A stretch of DNA of 62,416 nt, filler included, from Platydemus manokwari (GCA_037951405.1; 5 parts of 5 records of this genome joined end to end with filler, not necessarily neighbours in it), one strand, 5' to 3'. Positions 1 through 10,006 are shown, numbered from the whole stretch's first letter. Notes: generated by a model from the sequence alone, not told the origin. Numbers and translations are program-made.

Positions 1-816
1 CAGAATTATATTGACTGCTAACTCTGTGTCTAAGGTAGAGTGTAAACTCTGTAAGGGAAAGAAAACCTTTGCTCTACCCTCTAATTCAAATATTATGCAG
101 ATCAAAAAACACTTTTCGTCCTTGCATAATTTGGTAGATCATACAGATTCCCGTGAGATCCCGTTTTCTAACCTGATTGAATATCCTACTATTATATCTG
201 ATGAGGAATACATAGATGATACTATCCTTTCTTCTGGTGAACTTGATATCTCCATGCTTACCAATGGTTCTAATCTGACTCATATCAATTTAGATTCTGA
301 CGAAGAAGAAGAAGAGTCTTCATTCAACTCACCTCCATCTATTGTCAACTCTCAGGATATCAACGTGAATATCATTGATTATAAACTCTTTGGAGTATCT
401 AGTGGTGTAGATTTGGATGAGTGTCCCATTATCTCATCCAACAATTGCATTGGGGAGGAACCTGAAGAGTATCGAATTATTTTGATTGCAAACTCTGTGT
501 CTAAGGTAGAATGTAAACTTTGTACGGGAAAGAAGAAAACCTTTGCTCGAATATTACGCAGATCAAAAAGCACTTTTCGTCCTTGCATAATTTGGGTGAT
601 GTCTCTAATGATAGAATTATTTGTTATTGTGGTTTTTCAAGTAACTTTCAGAACTTTAAGTCCAATTATATGGCACACTCTTCTGATAGGATCATTACAC
701 CATCTAACAATAGTCTTTTATCTGAGAATGTTCTCATTAACTTGCAAGTAGGAAATGATAACTTGGTCAGTGATTGACTAAGTGAGCCGGCAATTGAGGG
801 TTATGTTCGAACTCAA

Positions 817-1656
817 TTGTCGGGTAAGAGTGTAATTGTATTTATTCCTCCTTTACCTGCTCTTGCCATTGCCCGTTCTAATCCGAACGTTTTTTATGAA
901 TCTTTTCCGTTTCGAGAGATTTGCAATTCCAACATAATACTTTGGCTTATACACTGGAATGATAGTCATTGGCTCTGTTATATTCTTAATGTAATGGAGC
1001 AAAAGTCTTACTTTCTTGACCCCGCAAAACGCGAGCTGTCTTTTGATATGGTTTGTTTTTGGGAAAAATTGAATTGGTTAATGGAACACCTTATTGTTCC
1101 AAAACTGACTTTAAATATCTCAAAGTCTTATCTTGTCAATGTTCCTATTCAGCTTGCTCCTTTTGACTGTGGCCTCTTTGTCAAAAGGTATATGATCGAT
1201 TATGCTTTAGGTAAAGAATTGCAATCTTCCCATCCTGAACTCCGATCGGAAGTTAATGCTTGTGTAAAGAATCTCATTAATAGGAGACTTGCTCTTGAGA
1301 GGGATAGGCTTCTTGCTGATGGTCTACATCCTTTTTTAAAGGAAGCGTTAATCTGGTGTGATGATATTAACCCGGATTTGACCCGTATTTTGGATTGTGG
1401 TCGTAGAGCAGTCTCTGCTTTACATCCTACTAGATTTAAAGTCAATATTGTTTATCCGTCCGATCATATAAGAGAAAAGAAGGATAAATCTATCTTTGAA
1501 CTCCGTAAAGAGTATGAAATGATGCCTAAGAACGTGTTTAGGAGTATCATCCCGTCTTCCACTCCAACATCTTTCCCTACGGTTGAGGATATAACTAGGC
1601 ACTTTACTTATGCACCCCCTCCTGACTTACCTGATTTAGATCTTGAGTTTCCTTAA
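817..1656 (+). pseudogene. Ulp1/C48-like cysteine protease domain of the retrotransposon polyprotein
   Basis: IHWNDSHWLCY...YFLDP...PIQLAPFDCGLFV matches the His/Asp/Gln/Cys arrangement of Ulp1/SENP proteases, placed N-terminal to RT as in NeSL-clade elements. Confidence 0.8.
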
Positions 1657-1699
1657 TGTGAAGATAACTTCTCTTCTGCTTCATTACAGTAGAAGAGAT

Positions 1700-3070
1700 T
1701 GACTCTGCCTTTAAGAACGCTTCTGACTCTGCACCTGGTAACGATGGTTTGTTATATAAGGATTGGAAGGAGATTGACCCCAAATATGTATTTTTATATA
1801 AATATTATAATCTTATTATATCTTCGAGAAGGGTGCCCAATCAATGCCGTAAGTTTAAGACTAGTCTTATTCTGAAACCAATGAAGGATGGTTAGACTCA
1901 TCTGGTCTCTTCATGGCGTCCTATCGCCTTGATGGATACCTCTTATCGAATATTCACTACTATACTGAATAATCGTATGCTCAATTGGATTATAGCGGGA
2001 AATCTCATCTCCAAGAATCAAAAAGCACTTCTATCGCAAGATGGTTGTGCTGAACACAATGGTTACCTTTCATCAATTGGTGAATCTTGTCGAATGAAGA
2101 GAGCGAACTGTCATTTTCTTTGGCTTGACTTGAGGGAAGCTTTCCCGAGTATACCTCATGAATTGATTTGGGTAACTTTGAGTAAAATGGGTTGCTCTGT
2201 TAACACTATTGAATTACTTAAGAATTCGTATCTTGATGTTTCCACATACTATACCTGTGAATCGTTGACGACTCCAGAGGTTAAGTTGGTAAAGGGAGTT
2301 AAACAAGGTTGTCCTCTTTCTATGACATTGTTTTGTTTGTCGGTTGACTTTATTGTTAAATGTTGCGATAGGTTTCCGGATCCTGTCAGTTTGTCAGGTG
2401 TAGAATTTTCTAAGCTTGCCTATGCTGATAATCTTGTTGTTATTTCGGCAGATGCAGCAGGGTTGGCTGATAGGCTTAATAAGATAGTAGAATTGAGTGA
2501 CAAAGTTTTCCTTAAGTTTAACCCGAGTAAGTGTGGGTATTATAATAATAAGGTCGAGTTATTGGGTAATTTGTGTATATATGGTGAACCAGTTCCCATA
2601 GTCAATGAAGGCAATCAATATAAATATCTTGGAGTTCCATTGATTTAATTCTCTCTAAGGCTGTCTTGGACTTTGAGTTGGTGTGTGATTCTGATCTCCA
2701 TCCCTATCAGAAGTTGGATTGTTATAGGACTTTTTTACATTCTCGTTTACCTTTCCATCTTCGAAGTAGGGATGTTAGTGTCTTGTCATTGTCTTTCCCA
2801 CATAAGAGACAACCGATAGGGAAATTGCCGGACTATGGTTTTGATGAGAAGGTTAGGAAACTGGTGAAGAAAGTTGTGAGCGCTGACTTCTTTCAAGCTA
2901 CAAATAATGATTTCATCTACACTTCCCGAGATCTTGGTGGTTTAGGAATAATGTCTGCTGAGGTAGACTACTACATTCAGAGTTTTGTAGGTGCCTTTCG
3001 TTTCCTTGTAAGTTCTGACTCTGTCTTTGGTAATTTCATCAAGGATAGATTGGTTGGATTGGTTGAATAG
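1700..3070 (+). pseudogene. Non-LTR reverse transcriptase domain (disrupted)
   Basis: RT motifs from SAPGNDG to YKYLG plus the thumb GGLGI motif; catalytic YADD reads YADN; stops and frameshifts. Confidence 0.92.
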
Positions 3071-3758
3071 TGAGATTACTGATGCTCACCCGGGCCCAGG
3101 TTCCTGGTGAACCAAGGTCAGGGTTGGTATTCGTAATCTCAGAAATAGGAAGATAGATGTTAAGTTTGTGTTGATGGGATCTGACTTGTATGTTAAGATT
3201 GAATGTCTGGGTAAGAATTTTTTGCTAGGAAAGAAGGAGAAAGATAATATGTGTTCTGTTCTTCATGACTGTGTAGGAGTGGTGTGTTTCGATAGTTGGA
3301 AGGGTAAAAAATGCCAAGGAAGTCTTGTATCCACTGTAAGCTTGTCTCCGGTATCGTTCAAAGTTATGAATAGTATCTTGTTGAGTCCCCAAGTTTGGCA
3401 TTTTTTGGTTTTGGCTAGGAATAATCTTTTGCCTTTGAATTATCGTGCGTTCAGAGTTGTAAAAGGTAGAGATTTGAATTGCCGTCGTTGTGGTACTGCA
3501 GTGGAGTCGATGGCCCACGTTAATTTATTTATGTTTTGTTTTATATATCCCATATTTAGATTGTTTACGATTCTGCCGTTGGAGAGATGATTGTTAGCGA
3601 AGCTGTATTTGGAAAATTTGAGCATCAAGAGCAAACTAGTTGTTGATATATCTGCGTTTGACTTACACCAATTTTGACTACAAATAACCATTATCGATAG
3701 TTTTACGAGACAAAACCGAGATTTGTTTGATTTTTCCAATAAAGTTTACATTTATGAA

Positions 3759-3797
3759 CTGTTCTTCTCAATTTATTCTCTGGGACAAAGCTAATTG
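3759..3797 (+). ncRNA. U2 snRNA fragment (3' of branch-point recognition sequence, stem IIa region), at 3' junction of element 1
   Basis: CTGTTCTTCTCAATTTATTCTCTGGGACAAAGCTAATTG, 36/39 identical to the copy at 8804-8766, and similar to conserved U2 CTGTTCTTATCAGTTTAATATCTGATAC. Confidence 0.75.
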
Positions 3798-3844
3798 GTA
3801 ACCGTACTAGTCTTAGTGAGCTCTTTGTACTTTGTAATAGGTCG

Positions 3845-4735
3845 AAAACACTACTGGTTCTGTTCCTGTTCGATCCGCTATTAATATTGATCAAAAATCT
3901 ATAAACAATAGTAAATCTGGTAACCGTAGTAACTAAGTGAGCTCTTTGTACTTTGTAATAGTTGGTCGTGCTACTGTGGTATTTGTAAGATTAGTGTGGA
4001 GAAGTTAGTCAGCAAGTATCATCCTAATAACCAAGTTATTAGTGATTGTTGTAGCTTAGTGTATAGGAAATATAGGAGTAAGGTTAAATTGATGGCTAAC
4101 TGCCTCAATTACAAGTGTAAAGAATGCTTGGTGAAGTATTCTAAGGTGTTCTCCACACGGTTGAGTTGAAGGCGCGGGTTGCGAAGTCTGCTCCCTCCCA
4201 CAGTAGCCAGTATTGCTGTGAGTGTAGTGCAGATTCTATGCACTCTGACTTGTCTTTAGAGGAAAGGTAAGCGTATAATATGTTAGAGGCGAGAGCGTGC
4301 GGTTGTTTAATTTGCTTCGACTGGTTGGCTCTGTGTTGTAGGGCTATGTATGGTATAGAACTTAATGTTAACTCCTTTAAAAGATTTAATATTGATTTCA
4401 TTTTGAAGCACGTCTCTCTTGAAGGTGTTAAGTTCAGGGAGGAGAGTAGAAATACGATGGAGATTTGCGATGAGAGTAATTTTAGCAAGTTAAGATCTAT
4501 TTTTGTGCTCTTGTTCTGTGGTTGTAGGAGGTGTTGTTAGTCTGGTTGGGAGATCTCGTATAATCTTGAGGATGAGTATAGTAAAAATAGATTGATTGAC
4601 GAAGTTGCTGATAAATCACTAGATAAGTTATAGGAATCTATTATTAGCACTTATGATAATAGTTGTCACAACTCTATGATAATTATCAAATCTACTTATG
4701 AAAAAGCCATGGAATTTGGTAGTAAACTCATATAG
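3845..4735 (+). pseudogene. Disrupted Cys-rich ORF of unknown function (repeated CxCxxC motifs), longest copy
   Basis: Manual translation across two frameshifts and three stops: ...INIDQKSINN...WSCYCGICK...NYKCKECL...QYCCECSADS...ACGCLICFDW...LFCGCRRCC...; includes ORF 4280-4540. Confidence 0.6.
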
Positions 4736-5018
4736 TAAATTCATATACTGTCAACCCTGCATTAAAATCTAAAACACCTATAGTTAATGAAGGGGACTCA
4801 AAATCAATTTCAAATAAAAACAGTTTGATAAAAAAGCAGTGGTCGTATACATTTAATTAATGATAATACAATAAGAAAAGTATTATTAATAATAATCCAG
4901 ACCACCGTGCAAATCAACTGCGCCTATTTTACATGGTAAAGATAAACTTATAGGACAGCCCACTACAGTTAATGACAAGGAAAATGTTAATAAGGTTTTA
5001 ATTAAATCCTATAAAAAG

Positions 5019-5530
5019 TTGAGAGTTTGTAGTGGTCGATCTGTTAATAATAACCTGATTTTGAAACGAAAGCGAAGACACAATGCTCAATTGACCGGCC
5101 GGACAAATCTAATACAGACAGGAAGGTTTGGCGAAAAATCTCGTGTCACGGAGGAAGTGGGTTCTGTGGGAGGCCGTAATGGCCCTCACTCCAAGGATCT
5201 GCTGGTGCCAATCGATCAGAAGTCTTGCCAACAGACTCAAGTAACTCTCTCAAGTTCTCATAGAATAGGGAGAGCGAAAATAAATAATGGCAAAACCACC
5301 ACAGCCTCTGCGCCTTACGATGCATAGAATCTAATTAATATTGACCAAAATCATATTAACCATAGATTAAATAGTGGGCTTGTCAGTCTTATTAAGATTC
5401 TTGACCTTGTTTCCTTTTGGAGCTACTACTGCGGTAATTGTAGGACCAAGGCAACCTGTTACATTGCCGAGGATATCTTCCTCTTTATTCTAATAAATTT
5501 TAGAGATTTAAAAGAAACAGTTCTTCTAAG
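5019..5530 (+). pseudogene. N-terminal copy of the same Cys-rich ORF family
   Basis: ORF 5019-5327 continues past a stop into NLINIDQNHINHRL...LDLVSFWSYYCGNCRTK, which aligns with INIDQKSINN...NSWSCYCGICKIS at 3880-3990. 5222-5310 also matches 7185-7265. Confidence 0.55.
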
Positions 5531-5929
5531 CTAACAGTGCGGAAGTTCCCTCAGCGGACAAGGGGTTGATCGGCGGTCAATTGTTAAATTGAAAGCAAAG
5601 GCTAGTACGGATGTTAAATCTTCCGGAATTCCCGAGCAAACAGGGCCTGGTCCGACCATCAGCGCAGAAACGAAAACCATTTGGTTGGGTTGCATAAAGT
5701 TAATCAAAAAGTTCTGGATGTTTGGCGGGAACCATGAGTACTGAAACCCCTGATACCACCAGAAAGGGTTGAATATTCCGCAGAAAACTGCAAAATTTGG
5801 GAAAAATTGGACTTAGGAAATAATGGAACTAAAAATCTAACTACTACTACTGACAAAAAAATAGGTTAGACTAGGAGGCTTAATGGAAAATAGGACGAAT
5901 GAAACTGGATAGAAACTTTGAAATCAATA

Positions 5930-6300
5930 ACTAAGTGGGCCGGCAATTGAAGGGTATGTTCCCCTTAAGTTGTCCGGTAAGAGTAGGATAGTTTTCATAC
6001 CTCCACTGCCCGCTCTTGCTATTGCGCGCTTAAAAACTTTTTTATGATAACTTCCCGTTACGGAATATAGAACTTCAAACATATTCCTTTGGCATATCCA
6101 CTGGAAAAGGTTGCCAAGTTGGCATCCAACCACAGTAGCGAGTCGCTTGATTGCTGTGCAGATTTTGCAGAGAAAATACATAGTTTTGATGAAAGACATG
6201 TATATAACCTTTTAGAAGCTCGGTATGCTCGTTTAAGAAGCCAATATTGCTTTGAATGATGTGCAGATTCCCTGAACTCTAACTTCTCTTTAGTGGATAC
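5930..6300 (+). mobile_element. Chimeric fragment: diverged copy of the pre-Ulp1 region (5930-6105) fused to a Cys-rich ORF piece (6120-6300)
   Basis: 5931-6105 aligns with 778-958 (PAIEGYV...LSGKS...FIPPLPALAIAR); 6240-6298 aligns with 4206-4264 (SQYC.E..ADS). Confidence 0.7.
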
Positions 6301-7011
6301 AAATACACAATAGATACAAATAAACAATTACAAAAATTGCAAGAAGAAAAACTAGCTCTACAAGGTCCAATAAAATTTTAAAAAATGGCTAAACCAGTGG
6401 GTTGCATAAATTACCACCGAAGGCTGGAGACTCCAATCTCCTGGGGGAAAAAGAGGTATTTATTAATTAATTAATTTTTAATTTCGCGAAAAGCAATTTT
6501 AGAAAAGTCATTTTTAATAAAATGTTATTTGATTTTAAAAAAAATATACTAGTCAGCAATTTTAATTCACCAAAGGAAACCGAATTGGTAGAAAGTAAAA
6601 GTGACGGATTGAAAGCATCTACTAGTCACGAAGACGAAACTGAAATAATAGTTTTATCCAATGAAATAGATACAAATATACAATTACAAAAATTGCACGA
6701 AGAAAAACTCATAGGAATTCAAAATGTTTTATTGGAAAGTAAAGTCAAAAAGAGAATCTTGTTAGAAAATGTTCAAACGAATTCCATGAGAGAATGTATA
6801 ATTTCTATAAAGACCATTGGAAATAAATCTCTTCAACTTTAGAGATAATTTTAAAAATGATGAATATATTGGAAATTAATCTCATAAATTACAAAGCCAG
6901 CTACATCAAATCGATATTGAGATGCACAAAGTTAGGCCATCAACATTGTACAATTCTAAGCTTTTCGGTTATTTTTAATTTTACACACAAAAACTTTAAA
7001 TATGTTAAGGA

Positions 7012-7380
7012 GGAGATAACCTGAACAAGCTTTGATCTGTCCTGATATATTTGTTGTGCAATTGCGAAGATTGCTGCAAATATGGTTTGGAGATGATTAT
7101 CTCATTTGAGTTTATTACTGATAAAGATAGTGACCAAATAGTTGACGCTGTTATTGAGAGTTTATTGGTATTCTTAAAAAAGGATGTCTTGCCAACAGAC
7201 TCAAGTATTTTCAAGTTTTGATGGAATAGGAAGAGTGAATATAAACAATGGCAGAACCACTATAGACTATAGACCAATTTGGTGATAATTAACTCAATCT
7301 TGAAAAACAATAGTTAAATTAGTGGACATGTCAATCATAGTGCAATATTAGATCTTGTCTCCTTCTGGAAGTGCTACATC
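7012..7380 (+). pseudogene. Two further fragments of the Cys-rich ORF
   Basis: DNLNKL*SVLIYLLCNCEDCCKYGLE aligns with SNFSKLRSIFVLLFCGCRRCC*SGWE; 7185-7380 aligns with 5222-5430. Confidence 0.55.
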
Positions 7381-8754
7381 CACATAACTAACAGGTTAAA
7401 TCTTATTTATATATAGGTCTATAAAATGTAGTAGGAAGATTTCGATATTGGATTTTCTTTGCGTTAAGTATTTGTTTAAATATAAGGATAATTTCTCTGC
7501 CAGGGTTGATAGAGTTAAATTGCTGGAAAATACCAATAAAAACCATAATGATAATTTAATTTATATTTCTAGTTTCTAATTTTATAATTACTCTCATAGT
7601 AATTTAAATGAAAATATAAATTTTTACTAATCTAAATTGTAGTCACTAACAGCTATATCGAATACCGAATATTTGCCATGATAATTAACATATTAAATGT
7701 TAATGCTAAAATAATTTGATTAAAGAATTCATACGAAAAAGTGATAATTTCGGTAAACATAATATCAATGAATCTTATAAAAAATTTCAATATAAAGGGA
7801 ATAAAATATTAATGCGAAGATTCGCAAAAAAAATTTTAACTCAATAGTTATCAACTATTATAATAGACCTCTCTAAGGAATAATTTTATAAAACATAATA
7901 ATAGCTTGAATATTTTTCATACCATGATGAGTGATATTGTATTGATTGAGCAACTAAATATCAAAAAAACTTATGGAATGGAACAACTTCCTAAAACTGG
8001 AACTATTTTAATCTTTGCTGTACATCAAAATCAAAACAAAAGATAAATTTCAGCTAGGCTAAAATGATGAGAGCTTGTAACTTCGAAACAACCTACAACA
8101 TAGTTCTACTTACTCAATTCTCTCAACACAAACATAAAATCGTCAAAATTCTAAAATTTTAAATGGCTAAAATGAAGACAATATTATGCCAATGATGATC
8201 GATAACCTGTAGACAAAGATGTCTGAGTAGTTTTAAGAGCTTTATTGGAATGAATGCAAATTAAACAAAGAGATTTTAACAGTATTTGCAGGAACACATA
8301 CTGGAACTTTTTGTCATCAGCGAATACAAATATCCACAATAGAGAAATATCTATTTACCAATATCTTACAAATCATCTAAGAATGATAGGGAGTTTCAGT
8401 GCATATGATTTGTATTAATACGTAATTTGACTTTGTCATATAATATAATTTAAATGCAATAGCCGAAAATAACAATGTATCATTATGTCATCATTATAAT
8501 TATATTACACGAAGTGTGATAATGATTTACATATTGATGTCAGAAATTCTCCTCTTAGAACCCTGTTTGTTGATATATTGGATTTTTACCACAACTTTGC
8601 TAATAAGGCGATAATAATAGAAAAAACAATGACTATGGAATTATCAATAATAATATGTATAATACATAAAATTTTTTAACAAATATATAGGTATCTTGTT
8701 AGGTTTGTTTTTATTTTTGCTTTATCGATTTATTATTTATTAATGTAGGCTCAT

Positions 8755-8804
8755 ATATTTCAGCTCAATAAGCTTTGTCCCAGAGATTAAACTGAGAAGA
8801 ACAG
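8755..8804 (-). ncRNA. U2 snRNA fragment (stem IIa plus putative IIb) at 3' junction of element 2
   Basis: Minus strand CTGTTCTTCTCAGTTTAATCTCTGGGACAAAGCTTATTGAGCTG: 24/28 match to vertebrate U2 as recalled. Stem IIa is kept (A-U to C-G, U-A to U-G). No Sm site follows. Confidence 0.8.
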
Positions 8805-10006
8805 TACATGGTTACAAGATTTATTACAAAACAAAATTTTCTCGTTTTTCACTCAAAGTCAAAATCTCGAATAAAAGTTGTAGTATAAAATTTTTAGAAT
8901 TCTGTCAGATTTTCAAACAAGTCCGAGCTCATCTGATCCAAGTATAAAGCACATCTAGGTCTTCAGAATCTCATCCCGCAGAGTAAAATATCTAAATATA
9001 GGAATATATATAACAAGACAAAAGTTAAACCTTCCCGAATTGGCCGATTTTCTGTGATCTAAAACAAATATATAAAGCATTTAACCTATATCCTATATAA
9101 GATTTTTTACAGGTGGTCGACTCCACCACGAGAATTGATCTTTGTAACCAAGATAGACGCTTGCCAAGCCACACAACACATAACCATAAAAAATAAAAAG
9201 GTGGAGAAGACTATACTGTCTCTCAATAAAAAACTATATAAACAATAATGAATAAAAAGGTAGAGAGGCGGAAGACCCTCTCGATAACAACCTTATAAGC
9301 AAACAAACACATAAATAAATAAACAAGTAGATAATAACCATATATACATGTAGAAAGTAGTCTATTTTTTGGTCTTATCGTCTCTATTGTGTCAGATTAT
9401 TAAACATACTATTGTGGTTAATTGGGGGCCTAAGTTCCTCGGCCATGTGTGTTCTATAAAGTTTATAACTCTCTTTAATTGAAGAACTGATAAGTAAAGA
9501 AGCCAAGTCAGATATCTCCTTATTATCAAGACCTATTCGTTTAAAGACACTATCATTTTGAGGACCCCAAGATCCCAAACAACCGACATTTATAGTATGG
9601 ACACTAACAGAATGTTTCGATTGCCAGGCAATCGAGACAGCCAATTCGTCATACTTTCTATGATTACTCTCCAAGTTTTTCTTGAAGTTCTCAATGGAGT
9701 CAAACGGAACCTTCAAGTCAACAAGGAAAGTATGCTTAATCTTATTCGCTTTATTCCTAATTATCAAACAGGTCTCAACAATGTTTTCATTTCAGTTGGC
9801 GGACAGTCAGTGTCTACATTGTAACCTAACGAGATAAGTCTTTTCGAAAGAACTTCCAATACTCCATTATGCTTATTCGTTGCACCATACGGGTTGCCAA
9901 CGCAATGATTAAGAACGTGTGCCATAGATTCAACCGACACACCACATCTCCTACAGTTCAATTCCCTACCCTTAACAACACGGAATGCCCTATAATTGAG
10001 TGGAAG
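8805..10006 (-). mobile_element. 3' part of a second NeSL/Utopia-like element: CCHC finger, restriction-like endonuclease, 3' UTR
   Basis: CRRCGVSVESMAHVLNHC...NKHNGVL...LRP(D)LII...LVDLKVPFD...RKY...VGCLGSW (PD..D.K RLE, frameshifted at RPD). Stop at 9384; AATAAA at 8825-8820; cut by the assembly gap. Confidence 0.9.

What the first reader, a model, noticed from the sequence alone, without database searches (positions are those of the whole stretch)
3738..8825. Two independent Ulp1-family RLE retrotransposon copies both end at the same U2 snRNA site
Seen: element 1 (+) and element 2 (-) each end AATAAA + exactly 15 nt, then CTGTTCTTCTCAG/ATTTA..CTCTGGGACAAAGCT. The 39-nt tails are 36/39 identical while the adjacent 3' UTRs are clearly diverged. 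In the shared coding stretch the proteins differ at 3/31 residues but most synonymous sites differ, so these are separate subfamilies, not a recent duplication. Established: this is the U2 sequence just 3' of the branch-point recognition motif GUAGUA, stem IIa is preserved by compensatory change, and Utopia (NeSL clade, RLE) elements insert at about this U2 position. Inference: a U2-targeting lineage with a SUMO-protease-like domain in this host, possibly not catalogued.
Basis: partly seen in the sequence, partly recalled or inferred. Interest (0 to 1): 0.8.

Follow-up and report, generated by a model that had tools for sequence, protein, structure and literature searches.

The report
U2-targeting retrotransposons in a planarian
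The window is a planarian U2 snRNA gene locus filled with dead copies of a site-specific jumping gene that always inserts at the same U2 base, a known behaviour (Utopia elements) seen here in a new host phylum and with an unusual gene layout.

Summary
Element 1 (+, 1-3758) and element 2 (-, 10006-8805) each end AATAAA + 15 nt and then run into U2 sequence starting at U2 nt 40. The tails are 36/39 identical, while the elements share only about 70% of their bases.

Other genomic copies abut 75 nt or more of the U2 3' part. All eleven distinct 5' ends are preceded by CTGTTCTTCT(CAG): four by the U2 5' part and seven by another copy's 3' end. So this is a U2-site-specific family that makes a 10-13 bp target duplication and often sits in head-to-tail tandems.

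The host is a triclad planarian. A copy with open reading frames is about 9 kb: a giant zinc-finger ORF1, an in-frame UGA, then Ulp1 protease, RT, CCHC finger and an R2-type endonuclease (RLE). The in-frame UGA (mostly UGA-CUN or UGA-CGG) recurs in all 11 related lineages examined, which suggests programmed readthrough.

The nearest named relatives (turtle, scorpion) are themselves U2-flanked Utopia elements. The planarian element, however, belongs to a separate Ulp1-bearing clade.

The target is a divergent, high-copy U2 paralogue (GUAAGA instead of GUAGUA) linked to 5S and U6 genes. The canonical U2 type appears only as halves beside an APE-type (Keno-like) LINE.

Verdict: a new variant of a known kind.

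The parts
1..3758 (+). Element 1, a dead copy cut by the contig edge. 1-134 is a duplicated ORF1 piece. 135-774 is the C-terminal zinc-finger part of ORF1. 775-777 is the in-frame TGA, followed by CTA. 778-c.1400 is the Ulp1/C48 protease. 1929-2648 is the RT core. c.3480-3520 is the CCHC finger. The endonuclease is deleted at 3520/3522. 3522-3758 is the 3' UTR, with AATAAA at 3738-3743.
   Evidence: BLAST map against reference copy L083, 85-87% identity. Pfam C48 6e-8 and RVT_1 4e-21. Many stops. In-frame TGA.
3759..3797 (+). U2 snRNA fragment (variant type, U2 nt 40-78) directly behind element 1.
   Evidence: 36/39 identical to the element 2 tail and 34/36 to the intact variant U2 L003. A Logan contig spans 3492-4099 with no differences.
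3798..5517 (+). An ORF1-only copy or copies of the same family, 5'-truncated. 3796-3840 duplicates 3918-3962. 3841-4729 and 4779-5450 match ORF1. 5456-5517 is a short alternative 3' tail (AATAAA at 5492-5497) that recurs at other loci.
   Evidence: BLAST to L089 (82%) and L083 (81%). The same tail type occurs in L091 and L095.
5518..5527 (+). A 10-nt U2 remnant CAGTTCTTCT (U2 nt 40-49), a spacer the size of the target-site duplication, between two tandem copies.
   Evidence: The same CTGTTCTTCT(CAG) precedes all 11 distinct 5' ends collected. A Logan contig spans 5228-5587.
5528..6106 (+). True 5' end of another copy (AAGCTAACAGTGCGGAAGTTCCC...), the start of ORF1, then an internal deletion to the ORF1/ORF2 boundary (5925-6106).
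   Evidence: 88% identical to the 5' end that abuts U2 nt 1-49 in C1147216.
6107..8759 (+). Patchwork of ORF1 fragments and AT-rich sequence, collinear at about 80% identity with a second locus (C1147216). This points to an old duplicated composite and is not a coding copy.
8760..8804 (-). U2 snRNA fragment (variant type, U2 model positions 40-84) directly behind element 2.
   Evidence: Rfam RF00004, 28.1 bits. 34/34 identical to L003. A high-depth U2 contig diverges at 8757.
8805..10006 (-). Element 2, a dead 3' part of a diverged subfamily cut by the contig edge. The complement of AATAAA is at 8820-8825. The 3' UTR is 8805-c.9383. The endonuclease ORF is 9384-9767 and the CCHC finger ORF 9764-9961. 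The endonuclease motif RPDL reads RPV-stop here.
   Evidence: 70-72% identical to L083. ORFs. Alignment of the intact homologue to the R2 endonuclease.

Best explanation
The window is a locus of a divergent U2 snRNA gene family in a triclad planarian. [quoted passage not shown]

The copy with open reading frames is about 9 kb. It has a roughly 70-nt leader and an ORF1 of about 1,600 aa, rich in cysteine and zinc-finger motifs. An in-frame UGA follows, and then ORF2 encodes an Ulp1/C48 cysteine protease, reverse transcriptase, a CCHC finger and a PD-(D/E)xK restriction-like endonuclease. The 3' UTR ends AATAAA + about 15 nt, with no poly(A) tail or only a very short one.

Shown:
- The element sits in the same orientation as U2.
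- Its 3' end is joined to U2 nt 40.
- Its 5' end is joined to U2 nt 49-52. That is a 10-13 bp target-site duplication, CTGTTCTTCT(CAG).
- New copies often land in the U2 remnant behind an older copy, giving head-to-tail tandems.

Inferred:
- The endonuclease nicks the bottom strand at U2 nt 39/40 and that end primes reverse transcription of the element RNA, as in R2 (target-primed reverse transcription).
- The top strand is cut 10-13 bp downstream.
- Recognition depends mainly on U2 sequence downstream of the nick, because the upstream side can be another element.
- ORF2 is made as an ORF1-ORF2 fusion by UGA readthrough, and the Ulp1 protease sitting right after the stop then cuts the fusion, in the manner of retroviral Gag-Pro-Pol.

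Elements 1 and 2 in the window are independent, old, inactivated insertions from two subfamilies.
For: 3' junctions. The window copies plus L083/L016 and L024/L017 run into 75 nt or more of U2. L085/L044, L030, L093, L096 and L043 run into the 5-13 nt remnant and then the next copy. In total 9 of 10 copies with this type of 3' terminus adjoin U2.

5' junctions. In C1147216 the U2 nt 1-49 are followed directly by the element's 5' end. All 11 distinct 5' ends are preceded by CTGTTCTTCT: 4 by U2 5' sequence and 7 by another element's 3' end.

Domains. Pfam; R2 structures at E 1.5e-39, including the CCHC finger and endonuclease stretch; SENP1/Ulp1 profile hit at 3.5e-9 with the catalytic residues conserved; YADD, the CCHC finger and the D..D.K residues are invariant or nearly so in 15 relatives.

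Purifying selection between subfamilies: 3 non-synonymous against 17 synonymous codon differences.

In-frame UGA at the homologous boundary in 11 of 11 lineages, with conserved residues immediately after it and no nearby ATG.

Host. A mortalin gene is 90% identical to that of Dugesia japonica, against 81-84% for other animals.

Nearest named relatives are U2-flanked. In Pelodiscus the 3' end abuts a 131-bit U2 from nt 39/40. In Centruroides tandem copies are separated by 11-19 nt U2 pieces.

Known biology of Utopia matches: the same site, tandem copies, and disrupted U2 genes outnumbering intact ones (PMC4640811).
Against: - No biochemical or expression data exist. Nick positions are read off from junctions.
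- One copy with the U2-type terminus has a non-U2 flank (L026). About ten more distant relatives ending ...GAAACTNNN have unrelated AT-rich flanks. Specificity is therefore not a property of the whole superfamily.
- Some loci are old segmental duplicates of each other (the window against C1147216). The junction counts therefore overstate independent events.
- The assembly is extremely fragmented, with 1.99 million contigs. The end of the U2 piece behind element 2 may be an assembly join.
- The RT tree does not place the element inside the U2-flanked arthropod/turtle group.
- Readthrough is inferred from comparative sequence only.
Confidence: 0.88

Rival explanations
1. The target is not a working U2 gene. 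It is a U2-derived pseudogene or satellite family that serves as a safe haven, comparable to YURE elements and U2-derived satellites. The elements are then specific for a U2-like repeat rather than for U2 genes proper.
For: All variant copies carry GUAAGA(A) where every canonical U2 has GUAGUA(U). Copies are quite divergent from each other. Sequencing depth over the variant U2 piece is about 400 times that of neighbouring sequence, as for a repeat array.
Against: The variant scores 116 bits over the full Rfam U2 model, with stems I, IIa, III and IV kept by compensatory changes. It lies in small-RNA gene clusters: a 1,140-bp tandem unit with a full 5S rRNA gene, and next to U6 genes. The regions that pair with U6 are conserved.
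Confidence: 0.3
2. The U2-like tail belongs to the element itself. On this reading a U2 fragment was captured or transduced at the 3' end and is carried along to arbitrary sites, so the shared tail says nothing about the target.
For: In the window both tails stop after 39-48 nt and are followed by non-U2 sequence. Several copies carry only 10-13 nt of U2.
Against: Other copies continue through at least 75 nt of U2 to the contig end. The U2 5' part (nt 1-49) precedes 5' ends. The 10-13 nt pieces are always followed by the exact 5' end of another copy, which makes them target duplications within tandems. Subfamilies that are only 70% identical carry tails that are 92-100% identical to host U2 genes, so the tail does not evolve with the element.
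Confidence: 0.03
3. A single ancient insertion into one U2 gene was multiplied by segmental or tandem duplication of the locus. The many junctions would then reflect one event, not site-specific integration.
For: The window and C1147216 share about 2.2 kb of collinear composite sequence at about 80% identity. L044 and L096 look like copies of one tandem junction.
Against: Elements 1 and 2 are in opposite orientation, share about 70% of their bases, and show a purifying-selection pattern of divergence. At least four different 3'-terminus types (TGAA; CCCGAAAA; A8-9 tails; AAAGAAA) meet U2 at the same base. Both 10-nt and 13-nt duplications occur, with different 5' end variants.
Confidence: 0.05

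Closest known systems
Utopia (U2 snRNA gene-targeting RLE non-LTR retrotransposons, NeSL clade; Kojima and Jurka 2015, PMC4640811)
   Same: Same endonuclease type (CCHC finger plus PD-(D/E)xK). Same orientation and same insertion point, with the U2 flank starting at nt 39/40. Tandem copies inside U2 genes. Disrupted U2 copies outnumber intact ones. Several subfamilies coexist. The nearest named protein relatives (Pelodiscus, Centruroides) proved here to be U2-flanked.
   Different: The host phylum, Platyhelminthes, is not in that paper's host list. This family has an Ulp1 protease, which that paper reports only for Utopia-1_TSP. It has two in-frame ORFs separated by UGA and a giant ORF1, about 9 kb in total, whereas 'generally one protein' is described there. 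Its target duplication is 10-13 bp, against none in arthropod families, 20 bp in reptile families and a 5' deletion in oomycete families. It falls in a separate clade in my trees. Its target is a divergent U2 paralogue.
NeSL-1 and Utopia-1_TSP (nematode elements with an N-terminal Ulp1-like protease)
   Same: An Ulp1-like cysteine protease lies upstream of RT, with the endonuclease at the C-terminus. The targets are small nuclear RNA genes involved in splicing.
   Different: NeSL-1 targets spliced-leader genes, and NeSL insertions are reported to delete target sequence (PMC3636483). The relationship could not be tested, because no nematode Ulp1-bearing protein came up in either search. The one nematode hit (Globodera) lacks Ulp1 and groups with arthropod Utopia.
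R5 / LIN families of planarians (NeSL clade)
   Same: Same host group. The same general RT-RLE type. The paper describes target specificity as diversified within this lineage (28S, tRNA-Arg, tRNA-Glu).
   Different: No U2-specific LIN/R5 family is reported in that paper. Whether the present family belongs to this lineage, and whether R5/LIN encode Ulp1, could not be checked. Repbase was not available and Burke et al. 2003 is not held.
R2 (28S rDNA-specific RLE element; solved structures 9nl3, 9dou, 8gh6)
   Same: RT and CCHC-RLE are homologous (E 1.5e-39). R2 provides the presumed mechanism of target-primed reverse transcription at a multicopy RNA gene. Precise 3' junctions with variable 5' junctions.
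   Different: This family has no Myb domain, a different target, and a protease and an ORF1 that R2 lacks.
Keno (APE-type, Tx1-group LINE targeting the same U2 site)
   Same: Same U2 position. A Keno-like element does exist in this genome, in the canonical U2 type.
   Different: The window's elements carry an RLE, not an APE endonuclease, and lack long poly(A) tails.

Membership tests
Utopia | Non-LTR retrotransposon with RT followed by a CCHC zinc finger and a PD-(D/E)xK restriction-like endonuclease | tested here: met
   Pfam RVT_1. Alignment to the R2 protein's CCHC and endonuclease stretch. C..C..H..C and D..D.K are invariant or nearly so in 15 relatives. In the window itself, element 1 has lost the endonuclease and element 2 has it disrupted.
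Utopia | 3' end joined to a U2 snRNA gene at nt 39/40, in the same orientation as U2 | tested here: met
   9 of 10 copies with this terminus type meet the feature.
Utopia | RT groups with Utopia families within the NeSL clade | tested here: inconclusive
   The nearest named relatives are U2-flanked elements of turtle and scorpion. But the planarian element lies in a separate, well-supported Ulp1-bearing clade. No Repbase reference sequences were available.
NeSL (sensu stricto) | Ulp1-like cysteine protease domain upstream of RT | tested here: met
   Pfam PF02902 at 6e-8. Profile against SENP1/Ulp1 at 3.5e-9, with His, Asp, Gln and Cys conserved.
NeSL (sensu stricto) | Insertion into spliced-leader RNA genes | tested here: not met
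   All junctions are with U2.
R5/LIN | Platyhelminth host | tested here: met
   A host mortalin gene is 90% identical to that of Dugesia japonica.
R5/LIN | RT falls within the R5/LIN cluster; targets are 28S or tRNA genes | not testable with these tools
   No R5/LIN sequences were obtainable. The target here is U2, which is not among those listed for LIN families.
R2 | N-terminal Myb domain and insertion into the 28S rDNA R2 site | tested here: not met
   No Myb hit in ORF1 or ORF2. The target is U2.
Keno | Apurinic/apyrimidinic-like endonuclease at the N-terminus of ORF2 | tested here: not met
   There is no Exo_endo_phos domain in the window's family. The domain is present in the separate element L086.

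The most novel reading that the evidence does not exclude
The planarian keeps two U2 paralogue families, and each is parasitised at the same nucleotide by a different retrotransposon lineage. The canonical type is occupied by an APE (Keno-like) LINE. The divergent type is occupied by the Ulp1-RLE lineage. On this reading the divergent U2 is not a pseudogene. It would be a transcribed, high-copy snRNA with a changed branch-point-binding sequence (GUAAGA for GUAGUA), living in 5S- and U6-linked arrays. In addition, the whole Ulp1-bearing RLE clade would express its polymerase by programmed UGA readthrough followed by self-processing, a retrovirus-like Gag-Pro-Pol strategy in a non-LTR element.
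Probability: 0.25. Interest if true: 0.75.

Novelty: new variant of a known kind. Interest (0 to 1): 0.45.

Why it matters
- It extends U2-gene-specific RLE retrotransposons to flatworms. Here the lineage has a protease and a two-ORF, stop-codon-separated layout.
- It bears on how NeSL, Utopia and R5/LIN are related, and on how target specificity is kept or lost. Close relatives in the same genome have lost U2 specificity.
- The conserved UGA-CUN/CGG boundary gives a directly testable case of recoding in a non-LTR element.
- The high-copy, 5S-linked variant U2 array offers an answer to a puzzle raised for Utopia: how a specific element survives on a low-copy target.
- RLE elements with precise targets are also of practical interest as models for site-specific insertion tools.

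Tried and rejected
- Scan for known RNA families: an Rfam E-value scan of the whole window found no ribozyme or other family at the element's 5' end (5528 onward). It found only the U2 fragment and a chance snoRNA-like hit.
- Conserved structure in the 3' UTR: RNAalifold on the last 100 nt of eight copies predicted no pairs.
- Protease region against solved structures: phmmer found nothing. A profile was needed.
- U2 flanks in relatives: I looked in the contigs of twelve related proteins from other organisms. Only the turtle and scorpion loci reach a 3' junction. The ten Ulp1-clade contigs (3.7-7 kb) show no U2 flank and either end before a junction or cannot be judged, so the target of the wider Ulp1 clade is unknown.
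- Odd U2-like genes lacking nt 39-95 (L011, L012): I considered that they could be insertion-resistant U2 genes. I rejected this. They have A-rich tails, variable 5' truncation and unrelated flanks, like a U2-derived SINE or retropseudogene family.
- Absence of intact canonical U2 genes: I do not treat this as biological. In a short-read graph the intact path shares both halves with the interrupted copies and is likely to be lost.
Burke 2003 and Malik and Eickbush 2000 are not held.
- Literature search on stop-codon readthrough in non-LTR elements: nothing relevant by title or abstract.
- Organism name: it stays coded.
- N runs in L083 were left as they are.

Full report
**The observation.** Element 1 (plus strand) ends with AATAAA at 3738-3743 and 15 further bases. 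From 3759 the sequence reads CTGTTCTTCTCAATTTATTCTCTGGGACAAAGCTAATTG. Element 2 (minus strand) ends with AATAAA (complement of 8825-8820) and 15 further bases. From 8804 downward it reads CTGTTCTTCTCAGTTTAATCTCTGGGACAAAGCTTATTG. The tails are 36/39 identical. Rfam aligns 8804-8760 to U2 model positions 40-84, with stem IIa kept by compensatory changes. The 31-residue shared coding stretch differs at 3 residues. 17 of the 28 conserved codons differ synonymously. Against a reference copy, element 1 is 85-87% identical and element 2 is 70-72% identical.

**Is the tail host U2?** An Rfam search of the whole genome found U2 genes of two kinds. One kind, seen full-length in L003 at 116 bits, contains the exact 28-mer of the tails. 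It reads ...GUGUAAGAA|CUGUUCUUCUCAG.... The 28-mer occurs 7 times exactly in 911 Mb and 10 times with up to 3 mismatches. Of these, two are uninterrupted genes (L003, L006). All but one of the others are preceded at exactly this base by the 3' end of a retroelement; that one (L013) starts at its contig's edge.

**Other copies and both junctions.** Copies of the same family in C1578189 and C1680901 run into at least 75 nt of the U2 3' part, up to the contig end.
- Among copies whose 3' terminus is of the ...AATAAA-N(11-12)-TGAA type, 9 of 10 adjoin U2 nt 40.
- The 5' end was found by walking upstream from C1578189 into C1147216. There the U2 sequence ATCGCTTCTAGCTTCATAGCTATGATCAAAAGTGTAAGAACTGTTCTTCT is followed directly by AAGCTCACAGTGCGGAAGTTCCC.
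- A genome-wide pattern search for that 5' end gave 11 distinct copies. Every one is preceded by CTGTTCTTCT or CTGTTCTTCTCAG. Upstream of that lies either U2 5' sequence (4 copies) or the 3' end of another copy (7 copies).
- The family therefore duplicates 10-13 bp of target and frequently lands in the U2 remnant behind an older copy. The window itself contains such a tandem junction at 5518-5527.

**Anatomy.**
- C1578189 (L083), together with the 5' part from C1147216, gives an element of about 9.0 kb. Its ORF1 of about 1,600 aa has no Pfam match but many Cys-rich and C2H2-like motifs.
- A TGA follows, then an in-frame ORF2 of 1,162 codons.
- ORF2 has Peptidase_C48 and RVT_1.
- Its RT and its C-terminal CCHC-endonuclease stretch align to solved R2 proteins (E 1.5e-39).
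- A profile of the protease region hits SENP1 and Ulp1 structures (3.5e-9). The catalytic His, Asp and Cys and the oxyanion Gln are invariant or nearly so across ten relatives.
- In the window, element 1 has many stops and has lost the endonuclease through a deletion at 3520/3522. Element 2's endonuclease motif RPDL reads RPV-stop.
- The region between them (3798-8759) is a patchwork of ORF1-only, truncated and deleted copies. Part of it is collinear with C1147216 at about 80% identity, so old duplication of composite loci also occurred.

**The in-frame stop.** In three planarian copies the ORF1/ORF2 boundary reads ...D/Q-TGA-CTA-AGT..., encoding LS(E/G)PAIEGYVR straight after the stop. I examined the contigs of ten related proteins from other samples. 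Each has the upstream ORF and the protease-RT ORF in the same frame, separated at or near the homologous place by a UGA. That UGA is followed by CUA (4 contigs), CUU (2), CUG (1), CGG (2) or CAA (1). Conserved residues come immediately after it and no ATG is nearby. One of these contigs (L099) has a further in-frame UAA between two upstream ORFs. UGA-CUA and UGA-CGG are the classical leaky contexts; that statement rests on my own knowledge. I infer programmed readthrough giving an ORF1-protease-RT-endonuclease fusion that the protease then processes. This is an inference from comparative sequence, not a demonstration.

**Host and relatives.**
- A mortalin gene of the genome is 90% identical to that of Dugesia japonica and 81-84% identical to those of other animals. 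The host is therefore a triclad planarian, though not D. japonica itself.
- The closest proteins to ORF2 are unnamed Ulp1+RT proteins from other assemblies (33-49% identity).
- The closest named ones (28-29%) are from Centruroides, Pelodiscus and insects.
- I fetched two of those loci. The Pelodiscus element ends AATAAAGTCAAT and abuts a 131-bit U2 from nt 39/40. The Centruroides copies are in tandem, separated by 11- and 19-nt U2 pieces. Both are therefore Utopia elements in the sense of Kojima and Jurka (PMC4640811).
- In two quick maximum-likelihood trees the planarian element lies in a strongly supported Ulp1-bearing clade. That clade is separate from the arthropod/turtle/Globodera group and from the Myb-bearing sponge R2-like group.
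- Its position relative to NeSL-1, Utopia-1_TSP and planarian R5/LIN remains open.

**The target and its neighbours.**
- The variant U2 keeps the U6-pairing regions and all stems but has GUAAGA in place of GUAGUA.
- It sits in a 1,140-bp tandem unit with a 5S rRNA gene (L003, whose contig ends overlap) and next to U6 genes (L006, L009).
- Sequencing depth over the U2 piece is about 5,500, against about 14 nearby. This suggests hundreds of copies.
- The canonical U2 type (GUAGUAUCUGUUCUUAUCAGCUUAAUAUCUGAUACG) was found only as halves, four 3' halves and four 5' halves. These halves flank a poly(A)-tailed LINE with an APE endonuclease and a 12-bp duplication, TCTGTTCTTATC. That matches the description of Keno.
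- I treat the lack of intact canonical genes as a likely assembly effect.

**Verdict.** It is a U2-site-specific RLE retrotransposon family of the NeSL/Utopia kind, seen here in a planarian. It has an Ulp1 protease, a giant ORF1, a conserved in-frame UGA, a short target duplication and a preference for a divergent, high-copy U2 paralogue. The phenomenon itself is known. The host phylum, the architecture and the target paralogue are the new elements.

Noticed in passing
L086 = G000:C1773618:601-6128 (minus strand); also L002/L020, L004, L005, L010, L021: A second, unrelated U2-specific element. It is an APE-type LINE (ORF1 398 aa; ORF2 1,126 aa with Exo_endo_phos + RVT_1) with a poly(A) tail and a 12-bp duplication TCTGTTCTTATC. 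It is inserted at the same U2 position but only in the canonical U2 type, so it is Keno-like. All four canonical 3' halves and all four 5' halves in the assembly are interrupted this way.
   Followed up: partly
L003 (G000:C1872688:1-1219), L006, L009: The divergent U2 genes (GUAAGA instead of GUAGUA) are linked to other small-RNA genes. One sits in a 1,140-bp tandem unit holding a full 5S rRNA gene plus U2, and others lie about 330 nt from U6 genes. The L003 spacer also holds palindromic TTAGGG/CCCTAA runs. It further holds an isolated inverted copy of the 13-nt target CTGTTCTTCTCAG about 35 nt behind the U2 gene, which is unexplained.
   Followed up: partly
L011, L012, L108-L116 (for example G000:C1750733, C771036, C632957, C660359): At least 11 loci hold a U2-derived sequence. 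It has U2 nt 1-38, then a hairpin that is an inverted copy of the branch-point-binding region, then the Sm site and 3' stems. The loci end in A-runs, have variable 5' truncation and have unrelated flanks. They look like a U2-headed SINE or retropseudogene family. C850335:1-104 carries four or more tandem 23-mers, GGCTAAGATCAAAGTGTAGTTCT.
   Followed up: partly
L098, L099, L100, L104-L107, L117-L119 (contigs of related proteins from other samples): All relatives of the Ulp1-RT-RLE protein have an upstream zinc-finger ORF in the same frame. It is separated from the protease ORF by a single UGA followed by CUN, CGG or CAA. One of them (L099) has a further in-frame UAA between two upstream ORFs. 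This looks like a clade-wide candidate readthrough signal.
   Followed up: yes
L029, L031, L033, L035, L037, L052, L059, L077, L080: Relatives of the same superfamily (68-75% identical in the endonuclease and 3' UTR, ending ...AATAAATCTTTGAAACTNNN) have unrelated AT-rich 3' flanks. They are a sister group without U2 specificity, or with a target I did not recognise.
   Followed up: partly
window 5456-5517; L091, L095: A recurrent short 3' tail (ACATTGCNGAGGATAT...AATAAATTTTAGAGATT..AAAA) is joined directly to ORF1 sequence. This suggests a non-autonomous deletion derivative that is mobilised into the same U2 site.
   Followed up: no
G000 HSP70 search: The genome holds many intronless HSP70-family open frames, seven of them over 600 aa and several with in-frame stops. 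This fits the known expansion of HSP70 genes in planarians. I used them only to identify the host.
   Followed up: no
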